Assembly (NCBI GenBank): GCA_976226885.1
Contig: OZ320315.1
Location: 58,652,001-58,716,000 of the forward strand
DNA: 64,000 nt
DNA from: Iphione sp. A-MEVVRFRX5
Lineage: Eukaryota
Direction of reading: 5' to 3'
Of this stretch, positions 2,803 through 20,073 are shown piece by piece. Every line of letters begins with the position of its first letter. Position 1 is the stretch's first letter. The translations under genes were made by a program, and so were the position numbers. The notes under the pieces were generated by a model, which was given only the letters and a program-made list of their open reading frames with translations, searched no databases and was not told the origin of the DNA.

Positions 2803-4624
2803 TATAAATTCGGTCAACTGCATTCTTTTGTAACAACTTAAATATACAATTAATAAATATGTCTTTTTAATAATATTTTACTCTCCAGCCCCCCCCCCCC
2901 CAAAAAAAAATTAATCAGCTGCTAGAGAATATATCCTTTGCCCGCCTGGCGGATAAGGTTCCCCTCGGAAATTCCACCCTCGTCCCTCTCAAAGCTGCTC
3001 CCGCATGAAGCGGCGGGCGATAGTTTCCGGGTATTCTGTTGAGTAGACTTTCGGAGCAGCCGCCTGCGGGCCCTTCCCGCTCGCTCGTCCACCCACTCAC
3101 TCACCAACTCGATAAAGCTGCTGCCCCCATAATCTATCAGGCGCCCTCCCACCGTGTTCGGTTGGCCCGGGTCTTCCCGAGTGCCGACGTAATGCCTTCC
3201 TGCGGGGCCACAGGTAAAGCCATGAGCTGCTCTAAAGTGACGCGCCGAGGTCATTTCCCAATGATCAAACTCCCTGCTCCTTTGTACTCGGAGATCACGC
3301 AAAGTGAACCGTGCCTGCTCGATCAAAGCGCACCAAGCTTGGCAGAATCTCCCGCCGACAATGCAAGCAGCAGCCCCAATGTCCCTTTCGTCCACTTCTT
3401 GTCACCCGTCCGACTTTACCGTTCGTAATAGATAGGGGAACATGCCGTCTCTACCACTTCAAAGGAATGCTTTTTAAAGTGCTCTGCTGTTCTGAGCGAA
3501 ACGTCCAGATTTGTAGACCATCCATGGTTAAAGGTAGATATCGGTGCTATCTCTATTTCCTTTTTTAGGCGGATGTCTTCATTGTGGTTCAACCCTCTTG
3601 CCAGCATTATATGTTTGTGTGCATGCTTGTGTGTGCCTGTGTTTGTGTGGTAAGGACGGTAACACTAAATCTCTTCACTTAAGAATGTTGATCATCAGAG
3701 CATCCTTACGCCCATCTCTCTCACCTCTCTCCAGCCCTCATCTTCTACTCTTCTTTATTTCCTCAAATATTCTTCGCATCTTGCATACCCTCTTTCCCAC
3801 ACTTTTCTCAGTAGTACTAGATCTCTTTGCGGTTCTCCCTACCGAGCCTCTCTTCTTCAGGACGTGGGAGCCATCAGAAAGGTGTTTGTCCTCAGGACGT
3901 CTGTGAAAATGTTGAAGGCGTTGGACGAACCGTTACACAAAACTGTGCCAGGGGCGCATCGGACACGGGGTCTGGTAGACCTTTGCTTATGAACCAGATA
4001 GGTAGTTTAGAAAGATGTGAGGGGTGTGGCGTTTGCCACATCGACAACGCCAACACTTTGGCACGGCTGCATGTCGGGCAACGCTCGGCACCAGTCAGCG
4101 GCACCAGGGCGCCCCATTACTGCCTCCTTCTGTAAGTCAAGTCTCGCCGGGCGTGAGGAGCACAACTCTTCCTTTGGCGTGGTACAGGAGCCGGCAAGTC
4201 ATCCCCCAGGCACTGAGTTAACGGCTCCTGTCTGGCCCAAGGAGAGGTCCCATGAGTAAATGAAATACATCCGCATCGGGAGGCTGTCTGCCATCTGGCA
4301 TGAACAAGTTATTTGCTTCACGAGCTATAACTATTAATCTCATAGCATATTCATGCTTAACAAATTGCCGCACTAACCAAGCAGAAATCATAGTCATACA
4401 TGTATCTTTGTAACGACAAATACTAAATCCAAGGCAAAGAAAAGCTTTGGATTTAAGAAAGTGCCGATTTAACGGCGTAAACTTTGCATGCATTGTATAC
4501 TTGGACTAGTGTGGGCTTTAGACGATTCACTTTAAAAAAAAAATCTCTTATCAGCTGCACGCAAACCATACTACTATTCGGGGGATGGTTTTATTGATCG
4601 TAGCATTAAAAATGATGGCCCTGC

Positions 4625-4638
4625 ACTTAACAAAACTG
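4625..4638 (+). repeat. Left copy of putative 14-bp TSD ACTTAACAAAACTG
   Basis: Identical to 6354-6367; the flanking bases differ on both sides. Confidence 0.7.
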
Positions 4639-4664
4639 CCCCAACCGACCAAACACACAACGTC

Positions 4665-5216
4665 ATGGCAACCCATCTACTAAAATGTGACTTCTGCAAA
4701 GCCTGGCTTAAGAACGAACGAGCACTTCTTAGACATCTCAATAAATATCATCGTGATGCCAAACAGGGTGACATCAAACGGGGTAAGTACCCGTGTTTCA
4801 TATGCCCATCCACATTCACCCGCCCAAGTACGTTGAAAAGACACTCAATTAAACAACACAATTACCTGCATCCATTACCCAAACCCGTCCTAGGCTACGT
4901 GAGACAACCCATCTACAAAAAACCTCTATGGAGAAACAATACAATCACTCCAGAAAATGTGAAATTTAAAACATTGACATTTGTATCACCTTACAGACGA
5001 CGTCGGGCTCGCAAAGATGATACACTCACCGAGAAAACCAACGATACGCACGATTCCGAAGAACAAGCCACGAAAATCGCCCACACCACCCCCTGTGTCC
5101 ACGACCAAAAGGAAGAAGTCACCAGAACCAGACCAGTTAATGAGCATCACACAAAAGATCAAGAAACAAGAATCCACGTCCAGACAGATTATACAACTGA
5201 GTCCTCAGATGTCTGA
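4665..5216 (+). CDS. C2H2 zinc-finger protein, N-terminal part (183 aa as read)
   Basis: ATG in GTCATGG context. Two C-x2-C-x12-H-x4-H motifs: CDFCKAWLKNERALLRHLNKYH (4686-4751) and CFICPSTFTRPSTLKRHSIKQH (4794-4859). Confidence 0.75.
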   Translation: MATHLLKCDFCKAWLKNERALLRHLNKYHRDAKQGDIKRGKYPCFICPSTFTRPSTLKRHSIKQHNYLHPLPKPVLGYVRQPIYKKPLWRNNTITPENVKFKTLTFVSPYRRRRARKDDTLTEKTNDTHDSEEQATKIAHTTPCVHDQKEEVTRTRPVNEHHTKDQETRIHVQTDYTTESSDV

Positions 5217-5868
5217 TCCAACCGTAAGGAAATCTGGACGCCACCTACACCCATCTGCTACACACCCTAGAAACAAACCGAATTCATCAACATCAACCAA
5301 ACCCCAGCCAGGGGGGGTGAACAAACCGACAAGCCAAGATGGTTCAACCCAACCGACGAAGGACAAGACACTAAGCCCAGTACATCTACCGCCAGTACTG
5401 ACTATAAACCTCGAAGAAGATTTAGAGGTAAGCGACAGTGACGAGAGCAGCACACCGGATGATAGCGACGACTCCAGCAACACGTCTAACTCAGACTCTG
5501 AGGAAGACCCATCCGACGTAGTGACGACCACCCAAACGAATGAAGGGATGGCTGACCCGACTGCTATGGACACCAACAACAGCAACACAACAACGGAAGA
5601 AGACCCCCTGGATACAGATGACGGCAACAAGTCCTACCCTGTAGAAGAATACGTCCCACGCCCAACAGAAGCCAGCAGGACCACCACTGCCACATACAGA
5701 CCCAGTGCCAGACACCTGTCTAATTTTACCACACGTGCCACACATGTACCAGCATCTGAAATTATGTATGATTTGTGGAGAATCGTAGGGAAAATAAACC
5801 AAACGGTTGGTGATGATTTGGCCCGGATACTTGTAAGGGAGGGCCTCATAAGACCATTGAGGCAGTAA
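4981..5868 (+). CDS. Ser/Thr/Pro/acidic low-complexity ORF with a short helical-looking C-terminus; probably the +1-frameshifted continuation of the zinc-finger ORF
   Basis: 295 open codons in AT-rich DNA, overlapping 4665-5216 in the +1 frame. It contains an S/D/E tract (VSDSDESSTPDDSDDSSNTSNSDSEED) and ends IMYDLWRIVGKINQTVGDDLARILVREGLIRPLRQ. It also has its own ATG at 5017. Confidence 0.6.
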   Translation: MYHLTDDVGLAKMIHSPRKPTIRTIPKNKPRKSPTPPPVSTTKRKKSPEPDQLMSITQKIKKQESTSRQIIQLSPQMSDPTVRKSGRHLHPSATHPRNKPNSSTSTKPQPGGVNKPTSQDGSTQPTKDKTLSPVHLPPVLTINLEEDLEVSDSDESSTPDDSDDSSNTSNSDSEEDPSDVVTTTQTNEGMADPTAMDTNNSNTTTEEDPLDTDDGNKSYPVEEYVPRPTEASRTTTATYRPSARHLSNFTTRATHVPASEIMYDLWRIVGKINQTVGDDLARILVREGLIRPLRQ

Positions 5869-6240
5869 CAGGCCATTAATTGATTAAAAATGGATTATGC
5901 TCTGAAGTACATCAGAGCTTGATAAGACATTAATTGGTTTATTGCATTTATACGGTTCATCGACTTCCACGTTAGATAATTCACTGATTACACAACGTAA
6001 TAGTTTTTTTAAAAAAAATGTTTAACCGAATTTAAAAGTTGATTACATGTCTTGAGTAAAATGTTAACGTTCAACCAACGGTTGTAACATAAGCACATAT
6101 CACACACCACAGTACAAATGCATCACTCAGTACAACCCACTATTACTTTAGCTGCACTCATTCACACTAAGGGCCTCAACAACCAAGATTACACAAGCTG
6201 CACTTAGAGGCACTTCAATACATAATCCCATCACCTACAC

Positions 6241-6282
6241 AACCCCTGAAGAAGTCACTCACATATGACGAAACGTTGGGTT
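6241..6282 (+). ncRNA. Minimal type I hammerhead ribozyme (Penelope-like-element type)
   Basis: Helix I AACCC (6241-45) pairs with GGGTT (6278-82). Core CTGAAGA is at 6246-52. Helix II GTCA/TGAC encloses the loop CTCACATA, followed by GAAA (6270-73) and a minimal palindromic helix III (AACGTT). Predicted cleavage is after GUU at 6277. Confidence 0.8.
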
Positions 6283-6291
6283 ATTTACGGC

Positions 6292-6297
6292 AATAAA
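6292..6297 (+). promoter_or_regulatory. Polyadenylation signal AATAAA of the ribozyme-ended element
   Basis: AATAAA 10 nt after the hammerhead and about 55 nt before the right TSD copy. Confidence 0.55.
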
Positions 6298-6353
6298 GCA
6301 ACCTAAATCTACATCTGGTCTTCAAGAGTTGTCTGTCTTTTTCTGTACACCAT

Positions 6354-6367
6354 ACTTAACAAAACTG
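6354..6367 (+). repeat. Right copy of putative 14-bp TSD ACTTAACAAAACTG
   Basis: Identical to 4625-4638. Confidence 0.7.
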
Positions 6368-12828: not shown

Positions 12829-14895
12829 CTAGTGGAGGGACACAGTCCACACTTCTTTGAGATTGGCAACCACGCAGTCGCCATCGCGCGCCTGATCCCA
12901 TGTCGTCAGTCTACGCATCGCAGTGCCTCTGGTAAGATTCTCGTACCTCCGAGCGTGCCACCGCATTAGCTCGGCCGAATCTAACTGATCCGACCCGCTC
13001 CGCCTGAATCGGATGCTCTGGTTCAGCGTGAGCTTGACTTGGCGCCCTCCTAATGCCTGGACCTCGGACCGTCCAGAGGCCCGTACGATTTCCCAGCCTG
13101 TGGGCGGTGTTGACTGGCATGAAACAAAGCGCCCCGCGGCCCACACGTAGACCTCCTCAGGCACTCCCGAGTCCTCCGGCGAAGGGGGGGATATGTCCTG
13201 GTAGGACCAGGCCTGGTAGGGGGAGCGCGCGCCTGGCGGTATCCATGGTTGGCCGCCCCCCCGACCCAGGCCTGGCGACGTAACAGGGTGCACGCGTGCA
13301 GTGGGGGAGGCCATCCCCCGTGCCAAATTCGGAAGCGACGCCCGTCTCCGGAGGTGGTGACCTGGAGTCACCCAGCGCTGAGCCGTGTCTTCCGAGGAAC
13401 CGGGACGCAGGGGCCGGTCGAGCAAGGCCTCTACATCCCCGCGGCGGCCTGGGGGTGCAGCTAAGGGCCATCGCAATGGCCCTGCCCCTGGCATGGTTGG
13501 TACTGCTGGTGCCGCCCCCAGTCCTTCCCCGCCACCTCGGGGCGGCGCAAGGGGGGTCTGGACTCCGGTAGGGGCTCCTGGTACTGCCCCCTCCGTGTCC
13601 GCTCCGCCCCTAGGGTCGGGTGGCACGACTTCCTCCGGCCCTACTCCGGCCGGCGTATCCTGAGGCGGTTCCGTTGGTGTGACGACTTCTTCACGCCCCG
13701 TCCCCGGCGTGGTTGGTTGTGCAGGCGGAGTCGTCGCTCTTTGCGTGTCGGACCGGGGAGACACCTGGGGGTCGGGGGTCCCGGTGGGCGCTCCTGGCAC
13801 TGCCTCCCCTGGGCCCGCTCCCCCAGGGCGAACCGTCGGCGACGGTTCTCTCATCCCCCTTCCGGTGGTCCCGGGAGTGGATGGCCCCGCCGGGCCTGCA
13901 GCCACCTCATCGTCATCTGTGGCCGGCTCTCCGGTCGGCGGTGCCTCCCCCGGCGGTGGTGAGCCTGCGGATGAAGGCCGGTCCGGGGAAGCCATCACAT
14001 TCCCCCCTGGGGGTGCCGCTGACAACCCTCCGGTTTCCGAATCGGTATCGCCAGAGGCCTCCAGGGGCTCGTCATCTTCCGCGATTGGGTCCAGTTCACG
14101 AGACGGCTCCTCGGGCACGGTCAGGGTGGGAGTCGCCCCCCCCTGATCCGATGGCACCACGGGTGGGGGGTGGATCAGCGGTCCCAGCCCTCGAGGTTCC
14201 GCTGTTCCCTCTTGACCGGATGCACTGTGCTGAGACAGTCCTGCCAATGTGGCCGCCGCCTCTTCTTCCAAACTGGGGAGCTCGTCCGAGCTTATGTCAT
14301 CCACCCAGAAGGAGGTCCCTAGGGTTTCAGCGAAGACCCTCCTGAGGGGGCTAACCTGGGTGGAGCTCCCTTCTTTAGTGGCTGACCCCGGGGTCGAAGA
14401 AGTGGGTGTGTCGACATTCCTACCGGGTGTGGCTTCCCCCCCTTTGGGGCGGGGCTCGCCCCCGGGTCGTTTCCGCGGCGGCGGGGGAGACTCCCCTGAT
14501 GAGTCGGTGATGACCACCGCCTGGGAGGAAGACGTTTCTTTGGACCAACCAGGTCCCAGGCGGCGGTCCAACTCCTCTTCTGACTCGGTGGCCGAACCCC
14601 GGCCCATCTTGGCTGGTGGTCGCCCGGGTCGCGTTGCTTTGGCCGGAATGGCCTTCCCCTTCCCCTTTCCGGGTGGTCCAGCAGCAGCCTTCCCTTTTCC
14701 TCTCTCGGCTCCGTCTCGACCTTGGTGGCGCACCGCCGCACATCCCCTACCAGGTGAGTACGGGGCATCTGGGGGTTGGGCCGACGGTCCGGGGGAAGTC
14801 TGCGTGGGGGTTCGTCCTGTCCGTTGGCCCGACGGTCCTTCGGCCGACGGTCCTGCGCTTCCGCCCGCTCCGTCGGAGTCCGACTCCGAGTTCAC
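12829..14895 (-). CDS. Long Pro/Gly/Ser/acidic low-complexity ORF with an apparently globular C-terminus, in frame with pol after a single UGA
   Basis: 688 open codons ending about 100 nt before the PPT. It is in the same frame as pol (TGA 14907-14905, then CGG CTA TTC GTG). There is no ATG near its 5' end, and no signal peptide or TM segment was seen. The last about 110 aa (VYVWAAGRFV...EVWTVSLH) are compositionally complex. Confidence 0.7.
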   Translation of the reverse strand: MNSESDSDGAGGSAGPSAEGPSGQRTGRTPTQTSPGPSAQPPDAPYSPGRGCAAVRHQGRDGAERGKGKAAAGPPGKGKGKAIPAKATRPGRPPAKMGRGSATESEEELDRRLGPGWSKETSSSQAVVITDSSGESPPPPRKRPGGEPRPKGGEATPGRNVDTPTSSTPGSATKEGSSTQVSPLRRVFAETLGTSFWVDDISSDELPSLEEEAAATLAGLSQHSASGQEGTAEPRGLGPLIHPPPVVPSDQGGATPTLTVPEEPSRELDPIAEDDEPLEASGDTDSETGGLSAAPPGGNVMASPDRPSSAGSPPPGEAPPTGEPATDDDEVAAGPAGPSTPGTTGRGMREPSPTVRPGGAGPGEAVPGAPTGTPDPQVSPRSDTQRATTPPAQPTTPGTGREEVVTPTEPPQDTPAGVGPEEVVPPDPRGGADTEGAVPGAPTGVQTPLAPPRGGGEGLGAAPAVPTMPGAGPLRWPLAAPPGRRGDVEALLDRPLRPGSSEDTAQRWVTPGHHLRRRASLPNLARGMASPTARVHPVTSPGLGRGGGQPWIPPGARSPYQAWSYQDISPPSPEDSGVPEEVYVWAAGRFVSCQSTPPTGWEIVRASGRSEVQALGGRQVKLTLNQSIRFRRSGSDQLDSAELMRWHARRYENLTRGTAMRRLTTWDQARDGDCVVANLKEVWTVSLH

Positions 14896-14904
14896 GAATA
14901 GCCG

Positions 14905-15729
14905 TCAGCCCTTGTACTCCTGAGGGGCCGGCAAGTTGATGCCTTTCGGGGTCGGAATCAAGGGGAGGGTCCGGGCGCACGTAGTTGATCCCGTCGACCG
15001 CGCTTTCGGGGCCCTGGCGTACGTACGCGGCCTCATCCTGTCTGGGGAGGATGCGGACCCCCCACTGGTCCCTGCTGGGTTGCTCGAAGAGGGCCCGGCC
15101 TCGGAGGCCGAACTGCGGGGCGGCTGGGAAGGCCTCTCCGTCTCCGATGGGGACTCTGCTGACCCCGCCGAGGTGGACGTGGGGGGGCCCTTACTGCCAG
15201 CGGAGCCGCCGGGGGTCGCTGGGGCGGTACGGTCTGTACCCAGTCGACGGCGCGCCCGGCGGGCTGGTCGTCGTGGCGGTCGGGCAGGAACCTCCTCTCC
15301 GGGTTCCGCCTCGTCATCCGAAGAGTCCACCACTTCGGCGCGGAGATCCTTCGTACGGGCTGTAGCCTCTCGCTGGCGCCGCCGGGCTAGGTCAGCCTGC
15401 AGGTCCGCGGGACAGTCCATCGCGACCCCGCGGGTAGGATTGAACCCCGAGAAACGAATGAATTGCACGTCGACCGTCTGGGTCATCTGGAGTGACCCAT
15501 GCACTCCCAGGAGGTGCCTCTTCCAGTCCGTCCGGCGCCGGAAAGCAGTACATTTGCACTCCAGCACCGGGCAAATCCAGCCAAACCCCTTGGGGCAATG
15601 AACTTGCTCCATGTGGCGGCGCAGGTTTTGCCGCTGCTGGAAACCTGTATCACACAGGTGGCACGAGAACGGGGCTGGTGGTGGGGGGGTCGCTCCTGGC
15701 GCGGGTCGGGGTCGTCCTCCTTCTGCCAT
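14905..15729 (-). CDS. Putative separately expressed accessory protein (274 aa; 966 aa with UGA readthrough) with two C2H2 zinc fingers
   Basis: ATG in GTAATGG context at 15729, 11 nt after a strong splice acceptor. CHLCDTGFQQRQNLRRHMEQVH (15663-15598) and CPVLECKCTAFRRRTDWKRHLLGVH (15573-15499). Basic patch PARRARRR. It is in frame with and inside the pol ORF. Confidence 0.65.
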   Translation of the reverse strand: MAEGGRPRPAPGATPPPPAPFSCHLCDTGFQQRQNLRRHMEQVHCPKGFGWICPVLECKCTAFRRRTDWKRHLLGVHGSLQMTQTVDVQFIRFSGFNPTRGVAMDCPADLQADLARRRQREATARTKDLRAEVVDSSDDEAEPGEEVPARPPRRPARRARRRLGTDRTAPATPGGSAGSKGPPTSTSAGSAESPSETERPSQPPRSSASEAGPSSSNPAGTSGGSASSPDRMRPRTYARAPKARSTGSTTCARTLPLIPTPKGINLPAPQEYKG

Positions 15730-18700
15730 TACGCCTGGGCCTAGGAGAGAAAAGGACGAGTTAGACACAACCTCCGATACGCTTGTCATGCGGGTCGCAT
15801 TCCGTTTCAAAGTCCGCAGCGGCCCCACGCCCCCCGCCGCAGTGGCGTGAGGCGGTTGTCCACCCTGCGGCGTACTCAAACTCCGCTGCGGCCTTTCGTG
15901 CGGCCCACTCGACCTATTACCGCTATGCACACAGTGCGGCGTAGTCGTACTCTGCTGCGGCCTTCCATGCGGCCCGCTCGACCTATTACCGTTATTCACG
16001 CAGTGCGGCGTAATCGAACTCTGCTGCGGTCTATAAGGTTTGTTATGTTTACACACCCTCCGCGGCGGCCTAATGCTCACTGATACATCCTGCGGCTTTT
16101 GCTGAATAATTCGTACAACGTGGGTGCCGCTCCTGAACTGTCGCGGACCAACAAGATAAGATGCGGCCCTTTCCTCCCGATTATCGCTCAGCTGCGGAGA
16201 CAAACAGTTCAAATGGACCTGGCTTACCTCGTCTGTGGCAGTTTCGGGCTGAACAGGAGATTCCAAGGTGGTGTTCTCGACGTTAGGGCACAGAGGCAGA
16301 TGGGAGATCGAGTTGACAACGATCTTTTGTGGCGAAAACGGCTCGTGGGGAGATCGGGGGTGCTCGCTTCGGTTGCTAGAGACGCTGCGGGGAACGCGCG
16401 TTGTCGACGTGGCGCCCTCTATGGGAACCGGACGGCTAAACTCCGCAGCGGCCTGTCCGGACTCCGCCCCGCGCTCTGGCGTGGTGCCCCCTGGCGTTTC
16501 ATCTTGCGCTCTGTGCTCGGGCTCTGCAGCAACTCTTGGGCCACCGGGTGACTCCGCAGCGGCCTTCCGGGGGTGTCCTGCCGCTGCGACGGTGACGTCC
16601 CCCAACGCGGGTTTCAATCGATCAGCGTGCACCACTTTCCTGCGCGCACCTCTCCCGATGCGATAGACCACTGCTGACAGCCGATCCTCCACACGCCATG
16701 GCCCTTCCCACCAGCTCTGGAATTTGGGGGACACTCCTTTCTTCCTCAGGGGAGTGAAGAGCCACACACTCTGCCCTACCACGTACTCCTGGGGCCTCAC
16801 TTTTTGGTTGTACCAGTCTTGTCGCAATTCGGCCGCTCGATTCAGCTTGCAAGCCACGCGCTGGTGAGCCTCCCGAACTTCCTCCTCCACCTGGCACGCG
16901 TAGTCTCCTCTCTCTACTGCCGGTTTTTCCGGGTGCCCGTAACGTAATTCCGCTGGCGTGGCCACTTCACGGTACAGGGTCAGCCAATTGGGGGACATGC
17001 CAGTGGTACTGTGGGGGGTGGCCCTGTATGCGGCCATCACGAAGGGCAGCGCTAAGTCCCAATCCGCTTGCCTCTCTTCCCCTAGTGTGGCCAACATGTT
17101 GGCAAGTGTCCTGTTAAAGCGTTCCACCACCCCGTCTGCTTGGGGGTGGTACGGTGTGGTCCTTGATTTTTCAATCCCCAATAACCGCAGCACCTCCCTG
17201 AAGAGCTCGGCCTCGAAGTTCCGCCCTTGGTCGGAATGCAAGGCCCGAGGAGGTCCAAACCGACACACAATTTCCTTGACAATTACCTCAGCAGTCGCTT
17301 GGGCAGTGACTTCAACCAAGGGGAAGGCTTCTGTCCATTTGGAAAAATGGTCCGCCACCACCAGTATGTAGCGGTGTCCCCGCTCAGTCCGCGGAAGCGG
17401 TCCTAGGACATCCGCTGCCACTAGCTCCCACGGTTCGCTCACTTTCCGGTACTGTAGTGGGGCTCGCTTGTTGCGGGGCGGTCCTTTCCGGCGTTGGCAT
17501 GCCTGACACGCTTGTGTCCAGCGCAGAACATCGCGCCGAAGTCCAGGCCAAAACCACTTGGTCTTCAGTGCAGCCCCCGTCTTCTCTGCCCCGAGGTGGC
17601 CACCCAGTGCCCCTTCGTGGGCTTCCAGCCATATCTGCTTCCGCAGGCTCCTTGGGACGTAGGCCTGGTACACCGGTCGCGACGGCTCCTCCTCCCAGCA
17701 CCGCATGAGTACCCCACGTCTGAGGCTCAGCCGCCTGGCTTCGGCACGTAGTTGGCGCTCCTCCCATGACAACCCGGGCTCCAACCCTGGGGGTTCTCTT
17801 CCCTCTTCAAGGGCATCCATGATAGCCGCCACCGACTCTTCCTCCCGCTGGGCTTCGCGCAACTGCGGCTGGTCCTCCGCCGGCGCGAGTGTCACCATGG
17901 CTGCCCACTCCTGCGCTGGCTCCTCTTCTCCCTCCACCCGATGGCACTGCTTACAGCGCTGGCGGGAGAGCCCATCAGCGTTGCCGTGCTTCTTTCCGGG
18001 CCGATGGACGATCAGCAGGTCATGGCAGAAGATTTCTTCTAGCCACCGGGCCAACTGTCCCTGAGGCTCCCGGAAATTGCACAGCCATCGCAGGGAGTCG
18101 TGGTCGGTCCGTATCTCGACCGTACGCCCTCCCACATAGCAACGGAACTTCCGTAACGCGAAGACTACGGCTAATAATTCCCGCCGGGTGATGCAGTAGT
18201 TCCTTTCTGGTCGCGTGAGTGTCCTACTGGCATACACCAAGACCCTTTCCTGCCCCTCCTGTTCCTGAGAGAGCACTGCACCCACGCCCGTGTCGGAAGC
18301 GTCAGTATCCAGTAAGAGGCGTCCCTGCGGCTTTGGGAACCCCAGGATGGGTGCCGACATGAGCCGCCTCTTGAGCTCCTCGAACGCCAACTGACATTGG
18401 TCCGACCACGCGAACTCAGCGTGCCGGTCGGCCAATGCATGCAACGGTGCTGCAATCCTGGCAAATCCTTCTACAAAATTCCGATAGTAGGAGCAGAGGC
18501 CCAAAAACCCTCGCAGTTCCTCCTGGCAGCGAGGCAACGGCCACTCGGCTACTGCCGCCACTTTGGCCGGGTCCACCCCTACTCCTGCTGCGGACACCCT
18601 GTGCCCCAGGTAGGCCACCTCTCGTCGGAACAGTTGACACTTTGAGGCTTTTACGTGTAGTCCTGCCTGCTGCAACCGTTGCAGCACCGATCTTAAGCGC

Positions 18701-20073
18701 TGGCACATTTGCCGCACCGAGTCCCCAAGAACGATGACATCATCCAGATAGACGAGGCACTCCACCCCGATGAGCCCTCGCAGTACTGATTCCATCAGTC
18801 TCTCGAAAGTGGAAGGAGCGTTGCAGAGCCCGAAGGGCATAACCTTGAACTGGTATAGCCCCCTGGGCGTGCACACCGCGGTCTTCTCTGCATCCTGGGG
18901 GTCCATGCGGACCTGCCAGTATCCACTGGCCAGGTCGAGGGCCGAGAAGAACCGACTCCCCTGGAGGGCGTCCAAGGTGTCGTCAATTCGGGGGATGGGA
19001 TAGGCGTCCTTTTTGGTGACCAAGTTCAGCCGTCGGTAATCCACACAGAACCGGGTACCACCGTCCTTCTTTTTCACCAGTACTAAGGGGGAGGCCCATG
19101 GGCTGGTGGAGGGTTCGAGGACTCCCCGCTCCACCATGGAGTCTACTTCCCGCTCCAGCTCCGCCCTCTTCTGCGGAGGAAGGCGTCGCACCCGTTGACG
19201 GATGGGGGGGTGCCCTTGCGTGTCGATTTGGTGCTGCACATCAGGGGTACATCCGAGCGGCCCGCTGGGGGTCTGGAACACCCCCTTGTACTCTTCCAGC
19301 AAGGTGTGTACCATTCGCCGTTCCTCAGCCGACAGGTCGTCCGGAAGGCTTTCCAGCAGCAGCCCCACTGCCTCGGCCTGTTCCTCCTCGATCACTGAAC
19401 TGGCTCCGACCTGGGCGGGGTTCACGTCCTCTACCGGGTGAGCCCACCCCACGTGGGTTCCCCCATGGATGTATGCCTCCTGCGACCCCGGGTTCCACAC
19501 CGGTACCAGCAGCTTCCGTTCGGCTGGGCGCACCACCGCATGCGCCACCCGAAGCCCCGACCGTTCCTCGAACCGCTGGTTGCCCTCGGTCAGAACTCCT
19601 TCTGGCTCCCCCAGCGTTGGTGCCCAAGTGGCTGTCACCCATCCTAGCTGCCCTGCGGCGATGCGATGGTCCCCTCGGGCTGCCAACAGCACCGCTCCGT
19701 CCCCCACGGGCGCGCCCAAGGTCACTTGTGCTCGTAGAGTGTCGACCGTTGCCTCCCACGCGTCCAACCAGTCAAGCCCCAGGATGGCCGGTACTTCCAT
19801 GTCGACTACCCTTGCCCTCACGGGCACCCGGGTGTCACCGAATTGGACTTGACTGGCCACCGTTCCCCTTACTACCAGGGGAGCCCCGTCTACGCCGAAC
19901 ACCCTGGCGTCGACAGGCCCCAGGGTAATGCCTCGCAGGTTGTCAAAGACCCGGCTTGATAGTAGAGAAGCAGATGCCCCGGTATCCACCAGCCAATCGA
20001 AGGTGCAGCCCCCCATCCTTCCGGACAGGAGAAGTCCGCTGCACCCTTGTCGTCGGTGCCCTTGCAGGACCAA
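14905..20073 (-). CDS. pol: Pol polyprotein (protease, RT, RNase H, integrase) with a C-terminal extension of about 560 aa; the frame is open back to the frameshift site at about 20200
   Basis: LVDTGA (DTG at 19986-19978), YLDD (18750-18739), TDAS (18306-18295), HHCC zinc motif (HEGALGGH...CQAC), and DDE triad DVLGP (about 17410), SDQG (about 17230), VERFN (about 17120). GPY/F-like WEGPW...VVHADRLKP ends at about 16610. No internal stops. Confidence 0.97.
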   Translation of the reverse strand: MVLQGHRRQGCSGLLLSGRMGGCTFDWLVDTGASASLLSSRVFDNLRGITLGPVDARVFGVDGAPLVVRGTVASQVQFGDTRVPVRARVVDMEVPAILGLDWLDAWEATVDTLRAQVTLGAPVGDGAVLLAARGDHRIAAGQLGWVTATWAPTLGEPEGVLTEGNQRFEERSGLRVAHAVVRPAERKLLVPVWNPGSQEAYIHGGTHVGWAHPVEDVNPAQVGASSVIEEEQAEAVGLLLESLPDDLSAEERRMVHTLLEEYKGVFQTPSGPLGCTPDVQHQIDTQGHPPIRQRVRRLPPQKRAELEREVDSMVERGVLEPSTSPWASPLVLVKKKDGGTRFCVDYRRLNLVTKKDAYPIPRIDDTLDALQGSRFFSALDLASGYWQVRMDPQDAEKTAVCTPRGLYQFKVMPFGLCNAPSTFERLMESVLRGLIGVECLVYLDDVIVLGDSVRQMCQRLRSVLQRLQQAGLHVKASKCQLFRREVAYLGHRVSAAGVGVDPAKVAAVAEWPLPRCQEELRGFLGLCSYYRNFVEGFARIAAPLHALADRHAEFAWSDQCQLAFEELKRRLMSAPILGFPKPQGRLLLDTDASDTGVGAVLSQEQEGQERVLVYASRTLTRPERNYCITRRELLAVVFALRKFRCYVGGRTVEIRTDHDSLRWLCNFREPQGQLARWLEEIFCHDLLIVHRPGKKHGNADGLSRQRCKQCHRVEGEEEPAQEWAAMVTLAPAEDQPQLREAQREEESVAAIMDALEEGREPPGLEPGLSWEERQLRAEARRLSLRRGVLMRCWEEEPSRPVYQAYVPRSLRKQIWLEAHEGALGGHLGAEKTGAALKTKWFWPGLRRDVLRWTQACQACQRRKGPPRNKRAPLQYRKVSEPWELVAADVLGPLPRTERGHRYILVVADHFSKWTEAFPLVEVTAQATAEVIVKEIVCRFGPPRALHSDQGRNFEAELFREVLRLLGIEKSRTTPYHPQADGVVERFNRTLANMLATLGEERQADWDLALPFVMAAYRATPHSTTGMSPNWLTLYREVATPAELRYGHPEKPAVERGDYACQVEEEVREAHQRVACKLNRAAELRQDWYNQKVRPQEYVVGQSVWLFTPLRKKGVSPKFQSWWEGPWRVEDRLSAVVYRIGRGARRKVVHADRLKPALGDVTVAAAGHPRKAAAESPGGPRVAAEPEHRAQDETPGGTTPERGAESGQAAAEFSRPVPIEGATSTTRVPRSVSSNRSEHPRSPHEPFSPQKIVVNSISHLPLCPNVENTTLESPVQPETATDEVSQVHLNCLSPQLSDNREERAASYLVGPRQFRSGTHVVRIIQQKPQDVSVSIRPPRRVCKHNKPYRPQQSSITPHCVNNGNRSSGPHGRPQQSTTTPHCVHSGNRSSGPHERPQRSLSTPQGGQPPHATAAGGVGPLRTLKRNATRMTSVSEVVSNSSFSLLGPGVMAEGGRPRPAPGATPPPPAPFSCHLCDTGFQQRQNLRRHMEQVHCPKGFGWICPVLECKCTAFRRRTDWKRHLLGVHGSLQMTQTVDVQFIRFSGFNPTRGVAMDCPADLQADLARRRQREATARTKDLRAEVVDSSDDEAEPGEEVPARPPRRPARRARRRLGTDRTAPATPGGSAGSKGPPTSTSAGSAESPSETERPSQPPRSSASEAGPSSSNPAGTSGGSASSPDRMRPRTYARAPKARSTGSTTCARTLPLIPTPKGINLPAPQEYKG
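15741..15764 (-). promoter_or_regulatory. Putative branch point, polypyrimidine tract and 3' splice acceptor
   Basis: The minus strand reads CTAAC-TCGTCCTTTTCTCTCC-TAG|GCCCAGGCGTA-ATG. The branch A (15761) is 20 nt from the acceptor (15741), in otherwise GC-rich coding DNA. Confidence 0.65.
15870..16029 (-). repeat. 69-bp (23-aa) tandem repeat, about 2.3 copies, in the post-integrase linker
   Basis: RPQQSSITPHCVNNGNRSSGPHG / RPQQSTTTPHCVHSGNRSSGPHE / RPQRS. Confidence 0.85.

What the first reader, a model, noticed from the sequence alone, without database searches (positions are those of the whole stretch)
4625..6367. TSD-flanked, RT-less retroposon that encodes a C2H2 zinc-finger protein and ends in a hammerhead ribozyme
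Seen: an exact 14-bp direct repeat brackets a 1715-bp unit that starts 26 nt before an ATG, encodes two C2H2 fingers plus a long disordered tail, and ends with a minimal hammerhead and AATAAA. Established: minimal type I hammerheads with a palindromic helix III mark the terminal repeats of Penelope-like elements (PLEs). In canonical PLEs the ORF next to that repeat is RT/GIY-YIG, and retrozymes are non-coding. Inference: this is either a protein-coding, non-autonomous ribozyme retroposon mobilised in trans, or the 3' cistron of a 5'-truncated multi-ORF (Terminon-like) PLE. I do not recognise either architecture with this cargo.
Basis: partly seen in the sequence, partly recalled or inferred. 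Interest (0 to 1): 0.85.

Follow-up and report, generated by a model that had tools for sequence, protein, structure and literature searches.

The report
Truncated Penelope element keeping its second gene
This is a front-truncated copy of a Penelope-type jumping gene that has lost its reverse transcriptase but keeps a second zinc-finger gene; that gene has its own intron and promoter-like spacer, which published descriptions of these elements do not mention.

Summary
An exact 14-nt repeat (4625-4638, 6354-6367) brackets a 1715-nt unit that ends in a Penelope-type minimal hammerhead (6242-6281). The "zinc fingers plus disordered tail" are two overlapping frames, not one ORF.

The unit is a 5'-truncated Penelope-like element (PLE). 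Relatives in the same genome read pLTR, ORF1 (RT + C-terminal GIY-YIG), a 135-190-nt spacer, this zinc-finger gene, pLTR.

The new point is that the second gene is split by a conserved phase-1 intron (window 4783-4996, 214 nt).
- The donor G|GTAAGT is fixed at synonymous sites in 25 of 25 families.
- The acceptor is conserved where the amino acids are not.
- Intron length matches the frame offset: 1 mod 3 for +1, and 2 mod 3 in a distant family with +2.
- The retained intron (frame A) and exon 2 (frame B) are both under purifying selection, so two protein isoforms are likely.

The gene co-diverges with ORF1 and also occurs in PLEs of public assemblies that appear to come from another organism. 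Splicing is inferred from sequence only; no transcript data were available.

The parts
4625..4638 (.). 5' copy of the 14-nt direct repeat ACTTAACAAAACTG, a putative target-site duplication
   Evidence: Searches show an exact repeat. It overlaps CCTGCACTTAAC (4620-4631), which matches the spacer/pLTR module of related families. This overlap is unexplained.
4639..6353 (+). 5'-truncated Penelope-like element copy: the last 26 nt of the ORF1-ORF2 spacer, the second gene and the 3' pLTR
   Evidence: Homology to full-length L031/L032 starts at 4653/4664 and ends at about 6337-6342. No RT or EN sequence is found anywhere near it in the window.
4665..4782 (+). Exon 1 of the second gene: start codon and first C2H2 finger (39 codons plus 1 nt)
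   Evidence: dN/dS is about 0.08. The exon ends at the conserved phase-1 donor.
4783..4996 (+). 214-nt phase-1 intron: donor GTAAGTAC, branch-like TTGAC, CACCTTACAG acceptor. If retained it encodes the second C2H2 finger and the ITPxNV(K/R)F motif in frame A.
   Evidence: The donor codons are GGT AAG in 25 of 25 families, while other invariant residues use mixed codons. The TTNCAG acceptor is conserved where the amino acids vary. Intron length is 1 mod 3 in 24 families. Frame-A dN/dS is 0.11-0.18.
4665..5216 (+). ORF A, the retained-intron product: 183 aa with two C2H2 fingers. The part after 4996 is not conserved.
   Evidence: After the acceptor, frame-A dN/dS is 1.2-2.7.
4997..5868 (+). Exon 2 (frame B, 289 codons plus stop): basic helix, DPTxRK..RH.HPS block, acidic Ser-rich block (VLTINLEEDLEVSDSDESS), C-terminal helical hairpin
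   Evidence: dN/dS is 0.08-0.15. Conserved blocks appear in 14 families. The AlphaFold model is mostly disordered, with helices at 44-60 and 252-280. A profile finds 30 public proteins.
6059..6353 (+). 3' pLTR-homologous tail
   Evidence: 77-80% identical to the repeats at both ends of L031/L032. The 3' terminus is shared with relatives.
6137..6222 (+). Two tandem copies of the (A)AGCTGCACT-N6-8-(T/C)AC(T/C)T module, the same module as in the ORF1-ORF2 spacer of full-length relatives
   Evidence: repeat family D1; modules at -48 and about -90 from the hammerhead in most tails; spacer.
6242..6281 (+). Minimal type I hammerhead ribozyme motif, with predicted cleavage after U6277
   Evidence: The core is invariant while the flanks diverge. 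There are 40 distinct copies. They have an extra A between positions 9 and 10.1, G10.1-C11.1 in 37/40, CG at 15.2-16.2 in 37/40, and helix I pair 4 as A-T in 20 versus T-A in 13. These traits match PMC4209133.
6292..6297 (+). AATAAA, conserved in related tails
6354..6367 (.). 3' copy of the 14-nt direct repeat

Best explanation
Window 4639-6353 is a dead-on-arrival, 5'-truncated insertion of an endonuclease-positive Penelope-like element (PLE). It was made by target-primed reverse transcription and is flanked by a 14-nt duplication.

The clade has at least 150 scored loci in this genome. Its members carry two genes. ORF1 encodes RT plus a C-terminal GIY-YIG endonuclease. After a 135-190-nt spacer comes a second gene, followed by the 3' pLTR with its minimal hammerhead. 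The spacer holds CRE-like sites and repeats a module also found in the pLTR.

The second gene has two exons.
- Exon 1 encodes one C2H2 finger.
- A phase-1 intron of about 214-247 nt follows. If retained, it is read through as a second finger plus an ITPxNVRF motif, giving protein A (183 aa here).
- If the intron is spliced out, finger 1 joins the frame-B region, which is about 290 aa, mostly disordered, and has an acidic Ser-rich block and a C-terminal helical hairpin.

Shown here: the homology, the layout, the truncation, the splice-signal conservation, the match between intron length and frame offset, purifying selection on both readings, and co-divergence with ORF1.

Inferred: that splicing really occurs, that the spacer is an internal promoter for a subgenomic mRNA, and that the proteins serve the element, for example by binding nucleic acid or recruiting host factors. 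The window copy lacks RT, EN, an upstream pLTR and the CRE part of the spacer. It cannot move by itself, and a single minimal hammerhead is not expected to cleave efficiently.
For: - Full-length relatives L031 and L032 read pLTR, ORF1 (828 aa in L032; Pfam RVT_1 E 3e-10, GIY-YIG E 8e-5), ORF A, ORF B, pLTR.
- 25 of 30 loci have RT/EN directly upstream, and B is +1 to A in nearly all.
- Donor: G|GTAAGTA in 24 of 24 families here. The codons are GGT and AAG in 25 of 25, against 19.5% and 37% elsewhere in the gene; every other invariant residue uses mixed codons.
- In foreign copies Lys becomes Glu but GTRAGT is kept.
- Acceptor: a Y-tract plus YAG with a CTRAY-like site at about -23 is conserved although the encoded residues vary.
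- Intron length is 1 mod 3 wherever B is +1 (214-247 nt). It is 236 nt (2 mod 3) in L072, where B is +2.
- dN/dS values: exon 1 0.08; intron in frame A 0.11-0.18; exon 2 in frame B 0.08-0.15; the same bases in frame A 1.2-2.7.
- Pairwise identity of ORF1 correlates with that of ORF2: rho 0.78 for A and 0.69 for B.
- The spacer and pLTRs share the CTGCACT module; the CRE-like sites are in the spacer only (none in the 37 tails).
- The hammerhead traits are met.
- Truncation points differ among solo copies.
Against: - No transcript data were available, so splicing and the internal promoter are sequence inferences.
- One foreign copy (L065) has A and B in a single 399-aa frame. A fused protein can therefore exist without splicing.
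- The window copy has no close sibling or master copy in the assembly; the best match is 71-74% over the gene.
- The 5' repeat copy overlaps an element-like 12-mer.
- No empty site could be found.
- The biochemical role of the proteins is unknown. Pfam, the Atlas search and the fold prediction give only zinc fingers and disorder.
Confidence: 0.8

Rival explanations
1. Frame B is reached by programmed +1 ribosomal frameshifting near 4990-5000, not by splicing. This would give one protein with both fingers plus the B region.
For: B is +1 to A in nearly all copies, and the frames overlap. One foreign copy, L065, encodes exactly such a fused protein in a single frame. The second finger is under purifying selection.
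Against: - No conserved slippery heptamer is present. What is conserved at the switch point is a Y-tract plus YAG.
- The GGT AAG donor is fixed at synonymous sites about 214 nt upstream, and frameshifting does not explain that.
- In L072 frame B is +2 and the candidate intron is 2 mod 3. A +1 shift cannot serve there.
Confidence: 0.1
2. The unit is a member of a separate non-autonomous, protein-coding retroposon family. It would be copied from a subgenomic ORF2 transcript and mobilised in trans by PLE enzymes.
For: The copy begins just downstream of the promoter-like module and keeps the whole gene intact with an exact 14-nt repeat. PLEs are known to mobilise intron-containing genes framed by pLTRs in trans (PMC3846280).
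Against: No sibling copies exist; the nearest relatives are full-length elements at 71-74% identity. Other solo copies start at the ORF1 stop (L047), inside exon 1 (L062) or inside EN (L058-L060), as random 5' truncation predicts. There is no upstream pLTR.
Confidence: 0.06
3. The copy is a domesticated host gene, derived from the PLE cargo and kept by the host.
For: Both reading frames, both splice sites and all conserved blocks are intact. The locus is unique in the genome.
Against: The perfect 14-nt repeat and intact non-coding tail with hammerhead fit a recent insertion as well. No orthologue could be examined. Many other element-borne copies are equally intact.
Confidence: 0.03

Closest known systems
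Canonical endonuclease-positive Penelope-like elements (Penelope/Poseidon, Neptune, Nematis; Craig et al. 2021, PMC8557442)
   Same: RT with a C-terminal GIY-YIG endonuclease, pLTRs arising from partial tandems, a minimal hammerhead in the pLTR, variable target duplications, frequent 5' truncation, and introns retained in genomic copies.
   Different: These elements are described as having a single ORF. This clade has a conserved second gene of about 1.2 kb between the endonuclease and the 3' pLTR. The gene has its own intron and a spacer that repeats a pLTR module.
Pen1_Av and pLTR-framed host genes in Adineta vaga (Arkhipova et al. 2013, PMC3846280)
   Same: Extra DNA sits between the ORF and the 3' pLTR. 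Intron-containing genes are carried between Penelope repeats with target duplications.
   Different: There the spacers are unrelated host DNA even between copies that are 90% identical, and the genes are host genes moved in trans. Here the cargo is one gene family that co-diverges with ORF1 across many families and into assemblies that appear to come from another organism.
Terminons / Athena (EN-deficient, telomeric, multi-ORF PLEs)
   Same: A PLE reverse transcriptase with accessory ORFs and hammerhead motifs.
   Different: The relatives here have a GIY-YIG endonuclease, are about 4.7 kb long and are dispersed along chromosomes.
Metazoan non-LTR retrozymes
   Same: The same kind of minimal hammerhead, derived from PLE pLTRs (bioRxiv 10.64898/2026.07.22.740005).
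   Different: Retrozymes are non-coding and tandemly arranged. This unit is coding, single, and carries one hammerhead.
Retroviral-type use of one unspliced RNA both as transposition template and mRNA, with spliced subgenomic products
   Same: Genomic copies keep the intron, so the template must be unspliced. Spliced and unspliced RNAs would give different proteins.
   Different: This is an analogy only. There is no LTR-retroelement machinery, and the second gene seems to have its own promoter-like spacer rather than a shared 5' leader donor.

Membership tests
Penelope-like element (EN+) | RT domain followed by a C-terminal GIY-YIG endonuclease in one ORF | tested here: met
   Met in relatives, not in the window copy itself. 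L032 ORF1 is 828 aa with RVT_1 E 3e-10 and GIY-YIG E 8e-5. 25 of 30 loci have RT/EN upstream of the gene. Homologues include bivalve, newt and tick PLE-type proteins. The window has none.
Penelope-like element (EN+) | Pseudo-LTRs: the 3' tail is repeated upstream of the ORF | tested here: met
   In L031 and L032 the 260-280-nt tail is present on both sides. The junction with the body is shared. The window copy has only the 3' one.
Penelope-like element (EN+) | Window unit homologous to such elements over its whole length | tested here: met
   71-74% nt identity over the gene and 77-80% over the tail to L031/L032. Protein identities are 62-65% for A and 58-64% for B.
PLE minimal hammerhead (Cervera & de la Pena 2014) | Core CUGANGA...GAAA, H17, and an open helix I (type I) | tested here: met
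   Window 6242-6281. The core is invariant in related tails while the flanks diverge.
PLE minimal hammerhead (Cervera & de la Pena 2014) | Extra nucleotide between 9 and 10.1, a G10.1-C11.1 pair, and palindromic 15.2-16.2 with no helix III loop | tested here: met
   An extra A is present. G-C is seen in 37 of 40 copies and CG in 37 of 40. The criteria are quoted from PMC4209133.
PLE minimal hammerhead (Cervera & de la Pena 2014) | Compensatory changes in the helices | tested here: met
   Helix I pair 4 is A-T in 20 copies and T-A in 13. Helix II pair 2 is T-A in 36 and A-T in 2. The copies were picked with a core pattern, so core invariance is partly by construction.
PLE minimal hammerhead (Cervera & de la Pena 2014) | Self-cleavage, expected only as a dimer | not testable with these tools
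   This needs in vitro transcription of monomer and dimer constructs.
Spliceosomal intron in the second gene | GT...AG with consensus donor, branch site and Y-tract, conserved beyond coding needs | tested here: met
Spliceosomal intron in the second gene | Removal restores the downstream conserved frame | tested here: met
   Length is 1 mod 3 where B is +1 (24 families plus L067-L070). It is 236 nt (2 mod 3) where B is +2, in L072.
Spliceosomal intron in the second gene | Spliced junction seen in RNA | not testable with these tools
   No transcript data for this genome were available. The joined exon model was not built or searched.
Non-LTR retrozyme | Non-coding, tandem units each with a hammerhead | tested here: not met
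   The unit is coding, single-copy and has one hammerhead.
Terminon / Athena | EN-deficient RT, telomere-associated, giant multi-ORF unit | tested here: not met
   GIY-YIG is present and the unit is about 4.7 kb. The loci are spread along many contigs.

The most novel reading that the evidence does not exclude
A widespread clade of endonuclease-positive Penelope-like elements is bicistronic. Besides RT/EN it maintains an accessory gene that is expressed from a pLTR-derived internal promoter. Regulated retention of one intron would yield two proteins: a two-finger protein, and a one-finger protein with a long disordered, acidic tail. The gene would have arisen when a pLTR-framed gene fused behind an autonomous PLE. 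It would then have been inherited with the element through family diversification and across host species.
Probability: 0.55. Interest if true: 0.7.

Novelty: new variant of a known kind. Interest (0 to 1): 0.6.

Why it matters
EN+ Penelope-like elements are described as single-ORF retroelements. Their retention of introns is a long-standing oddity with no known purpose. Here an intron sits in a conserved accessory gene where both the retained and the spliced reading are under selection. This gives intron retention a possible coding function and gives PLEs an accessory protein to study. It also matters for annotation: solo copies like this one look like intron-containing zinc-finger host genes and could be miscounted as such. 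The claim is directly testable with RNA-seq or long-read cDNA from this animal.

Tried and rejected
- Rfam at gathering and at E-value thresholds found no hammerhead family. This is expected for a motif with no helix III loop, so it does not count against the ribozyme.
- The word-indexed protein search with ORF B found nothing. The exhaustive profile search then found 30 proteins.
- The ESM Atlas feature search gave no usable hit.
- The AlphaFold model of exon 2 had mean pLDDT 57 and was mostly disordered. It was not worth a fold search.
- A short 38-nt intron (AAT|GTGAAA...CAG) was rejected because it gives the wrong frame.
- My first check of the GTAAGT donor failed only because I had placed the acceptor 4 nt too far downstream. 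It was corrected after the multi-family comparison.
- Empty-site test: both 300-nt flanks are unique in the genome, so there is no paralogous empty site.
- Nested insertion into an older PLE spacer: blastn and an nhmmer profile of 20 spacers find nothing in the flanks or across the flank-to-flank junction.
- Common origin with the zinc-finger protein of the Gypsy element in the same window: the finger pairs align at 24% identity (E 0.001 for one comparison) and the tail shows no profile similarity. Homology is not shown.
- A fixed subgenomic start site for solo copies was rejected, because truncation points differ.
- The joined exon 1 + exon 2 protein was deliberately not built, searched or folded. 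The exons were handled separately by reference.
Full report
**Observation.**
The window holds an exact 14-nt direct repeat, ACTTAACAAAACTG, at 4625-4638 and 6354-6367. Between the copies lie 1715 nt (4639-6353). The ATG at 4665 is 26 nt inside the unit. ORF A (4665-5216, 183 aa) has two C2H2 fingers.

The long 'tail' is a different frame. ORF B (4981-5868, 295 aa) overlaps A and is +1 to it.

Near the 3' end, 6242-6281 reads ACCC-CUGAAGA-A-GUCA(loop)UGAC-GAAA-CG-U-U|GGGU. AATAAA follows at 6292-6297. Rfam gives no hammerhead hit at either threshold, because this motif has no helix III hairpin.

**What the unit is.**
A DNA search of the animal's own genome (1.18 Gb, 89 contigs) found no close copy. 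It did find relatives at 67-74% identity over the gene and 77-81% over the last 280 nt.

In two of them the 280-nt tail occurs twice, about 4.6 kb apart. The layout between the tails is:
- an ORF1 of 828 aa (L032) with RVT_1 and GIY-YIG domains;
- a spacer of 135-150 nt;
- ORF A, then ORF B;
- the second tail.

This is the structure of an endonuclease-positive Penelope-like element (PLE) with pseudo-LTRs. ORF1 finds 2055 homologues, including proteins from scallops, a clam, a newt and a tick.

Protein searches with A and B gave at least 150 and 117 scored loci (818 and 1602 candidates). Of the 30 loci fetched:
- 21 have a complete endonuclease and RT directly upstream;
- 4 have a partial endonuclease;
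- 5 have none, including the window copy.

The window has no RT or EN sequence near the unit. The solo copies begin at different points:
- L047 at the ORF1 stop codon;
- the window copy 26 nt before the ATG;
- L062 inside exon 1;
- L058-L060 inside the endonuclease.

This is the pattern of random 5' truncation, not of a fixed subgenomic start. The 3' end of the window unit coincides with the terminus shared with relatives. It is not Terminon-like, because the relatives carry an endonuclease and are about 4.7 kb long.

**The hammerhead.**
In 40 distinct related tails the core is kept while the flanks diverge. The motif has:
- an extra A between positions 9 and 10.1;
- G10.1-C11.1 in 37 of 40 copies;
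- CG at 15.2-16.2 in 37 of 40, which is palindromic with the flanking A and U;
- helix I pair 4 as A-T in 20 copies and T-A in 13.

Cervera and de la Pena list these traits for PLE minimal hammerheads, which they expect to act as dimers and which cleave poorly in vitro (PMC4209133). The window copy has only one such motif.

**The second gene is split by an intron.**
B is +1 to A in nearly every copy, including families with only 35-50% protein identity. The frame-B reading opens about 20 nt before a spot where the DNA is conserved but the encoded residues are not. That spot is a pyrimidine run ending in YAG (CCTTACAG, CTTGCAG, TTCCAG, TTTCAG, CTTGTAG), with a CTRAY-like site at about -23.

About 214-226 nt upstream, every copy has G|GTAAGTA(C/T) in the Gly-Lys-Tyr codons that open the second finger. 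It sits in phase 1.

Across 25 families every other invariant residue uses a free mix of synonymous codons. This Gly is GGT in 25 of 25 and this Lys is AAG in 25 of 25, against 19.5% and 37% elsewhere in the gene.

Removing 4783-4996 (214 nt) joins frame A to frame B. In 24 families the length is always 1 mod 3.

**Selection on both readings.**
NG86 estimates were made among the window copy, L031 and L032.

| Region and frame | dN/dS |
|---|---|
| Exon 1 | 0.08 |
| Intron, read in frame A | 0.11-0.18 |
| After the acceptor, frame B | 0.08-0.15 |
| After the acceptor, same bases in frame A | 1.2-2.7 |

So frame B is the coding frame from the acceptor onward. The intron is also constrained as protein, which points to two products:
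- a retained-intron protein A with two fingers and an ITPxNV(K/R)F motif;
- a spliced protein with finger 1 joined to B.

I did not build, search or fold the joined exon model. Each exon was handled separately by reference.

**Test against frameshifting, using other genomes.**
A profile of exon-2 proteins from 14 families found 30 proteins in the public representative library. Those I looked up lie on assemblies of sequencing runs ERR14368245/48/49 and on one ENA assembly. Each sits behind a PLE RT/EN ORF.

| Locus | Donor | Intron length | Frame of B relative to A |
|---|---|---|---|
| L067 | GG|GTAAGT | 223 nt | +1 |
| L068 | G|GTGAGT | 217 nt | +1 |
| L069 | G|GTGAGT | 247 nt | +1 |
| L072 | G|GTACGT | 236 nt (2 mod 3) | +2 |

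- In L068 and L069 the lysine has become glutamate while GTRAGT is kept.
- L072 is a more distant family. Its donor sits in the same Gly codon and its acceptor is CCTTCCACTCAG. Frame B stays open from that acceptor into the B protein.

Intron length class thus follows the frame offset. A +1 frameshift signal cannot explain this.

One copy, L065, has A and B in one 399-aa frame. It also has an in-phase acceptor at 267 nt. This shows a fused protein is tolerated and keeps the frameshift rival alive at about 10%.

**Inheritance and the spacer.**
Across 11 families, pairwise identity of ORF1 (58-73%) correlates with that of A (rho 0.78) and of B (rho 0.69). The pairs are not independent, so this is descriptive. 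It fits a gene inherited with the element rather than captured repeatedly.

The ORF1-ORF2 spacer is conserved. It has one to several TGACGTCA-like sites, followed by (A)AGCTGCACT-N6-8-TACTTCAG, or a TATA-like run in two families. The same CTGCACT module occurs twice in the pLTR, at -48 and about -90 from the hammerhead.

Penelope pLTRs are reported to hold the promoter (PMC8557442; PMC3846280). I therefore read the spacer as a pLTR-derived internal promoter for the second gene. That reading is inference.

**The proteins.**
Beyond the fingers nothing is recognised. The exon-2 protein is predicted to be mostly disordered, with a basic helix and a confident C-terminal helical hairpin. Conserved blocks include DPTxRK..RH.HPS and an acidic Ser-rich block after a short hydrophobic run. 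From general knowledge that block resembles a SUMO-interaction motif; I did not test this. The protein's role in the element's life cycle is unknown.

**Open points.**
- The 5' repeat copy overlaps CCTGCACTTAAC (4620-4631). This equals the spacer module of L045/L049 and the pLTR module of L047. Yet the flanks show no other PLE similarity, and the distance to the ATG is about 43 nt too short to be in register.
- This overlap may be chance. It may reflect endonuclease preference for element-like sites; self-recognition by a Penelope endonuclease is reported in PMC11167929. Or it may be a more complex junction.
- The flanks are unique in the genome, so no empty site was available.
- The window copy's own subfamily has no other member in the assembly.

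**Comparison with what is known.**
Craig et al. 2021 state that canonical EN+ PLEs have a single ORF, and mention only upstream ORF1s in some lineages. Arkhipova et al. 2013 describe unrelated host DNA between the ORF and the 3' pLTR in Pen1_Av, and intron-containing host genes moved between pLTRs. Full-text searches found no description of a conserved downstream zinc-finger gene in PLEs. This covers only the papers I could search.

The intron, the two readings and the spacer module are added here.

**Verdict.**
The window feature itself is an ordinary truncated PLE copy. The architecture it reveals is a new variant of a known kind.

Noticed in passing
window 12829-20073, minus strand: A GC-rich Gypsy-type element. 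Its 1722-aa pol ORF ends in two C2H2 fingers and is followed by a 688-aa, mostly low-complexity ORF. The finger pair aligns with the PLE fingers at only 24% identity, and the tail shows no profile similarity. The shared layout is not shown to be homology.
   Followed up: partly
window 4620-4631: CCTGCACTTAAC in the 5' flank is an exact match to the spacer/pLTR module of related PLE families, and it overlaps the 5' copy of the 14-nt repeat. About 0.008 exact matches are expected per window (my estimate; 0.28 with one mismatch allowed). No explanation has been settled.
   Followed up: partly
L032:3698-6184 (-) and L067:201-2216 (+): L032 holds the only uninterrupted ORF1 in my set. It reads RYINDIF at the RT motif where 23 other copies read R(Y/F)IDD(I/V)F. 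A foreign element (L067) shows the same D-to-N change.
   Followed up: no
L013, L016-L018, L020-L025, L028, L030 (about 100-nt matches to window 6241-6337): Many loci share only the stretch from the hammerhead to the 3' end, at 80-93% identity, with unrelated sequence upstream. They are either extremely 5'-truncated copies or other families sharing just this end.
   Followed up: no
L065:688-1887: A foreign PLE in which the two-finger part and the B part form one continuous 399-aa ORF. It still carries the GTAAGT donor and two candidate acceptors, at 223 nt and 267 nt.
   Followed up: partly
L072:3079-4364: A distant foreign family in which the ORF A stop and the ORF B ATG overlap by one base (TGATG). 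B lies in the +2 frame, and a 236-nt candidate intron restores the frame. A minimal hammerhead with AUAU at helix III lies at 4888.
   Followed up: partly
L047 (own genome C1:122.27 Mb): A solo copy that starts at the ORF1 stop codon. An 11-nt AATTATGTAAT repeat spans both junctions, and about 22 nt of the 5' flank recur in the 3' flank.
   Followed up: no
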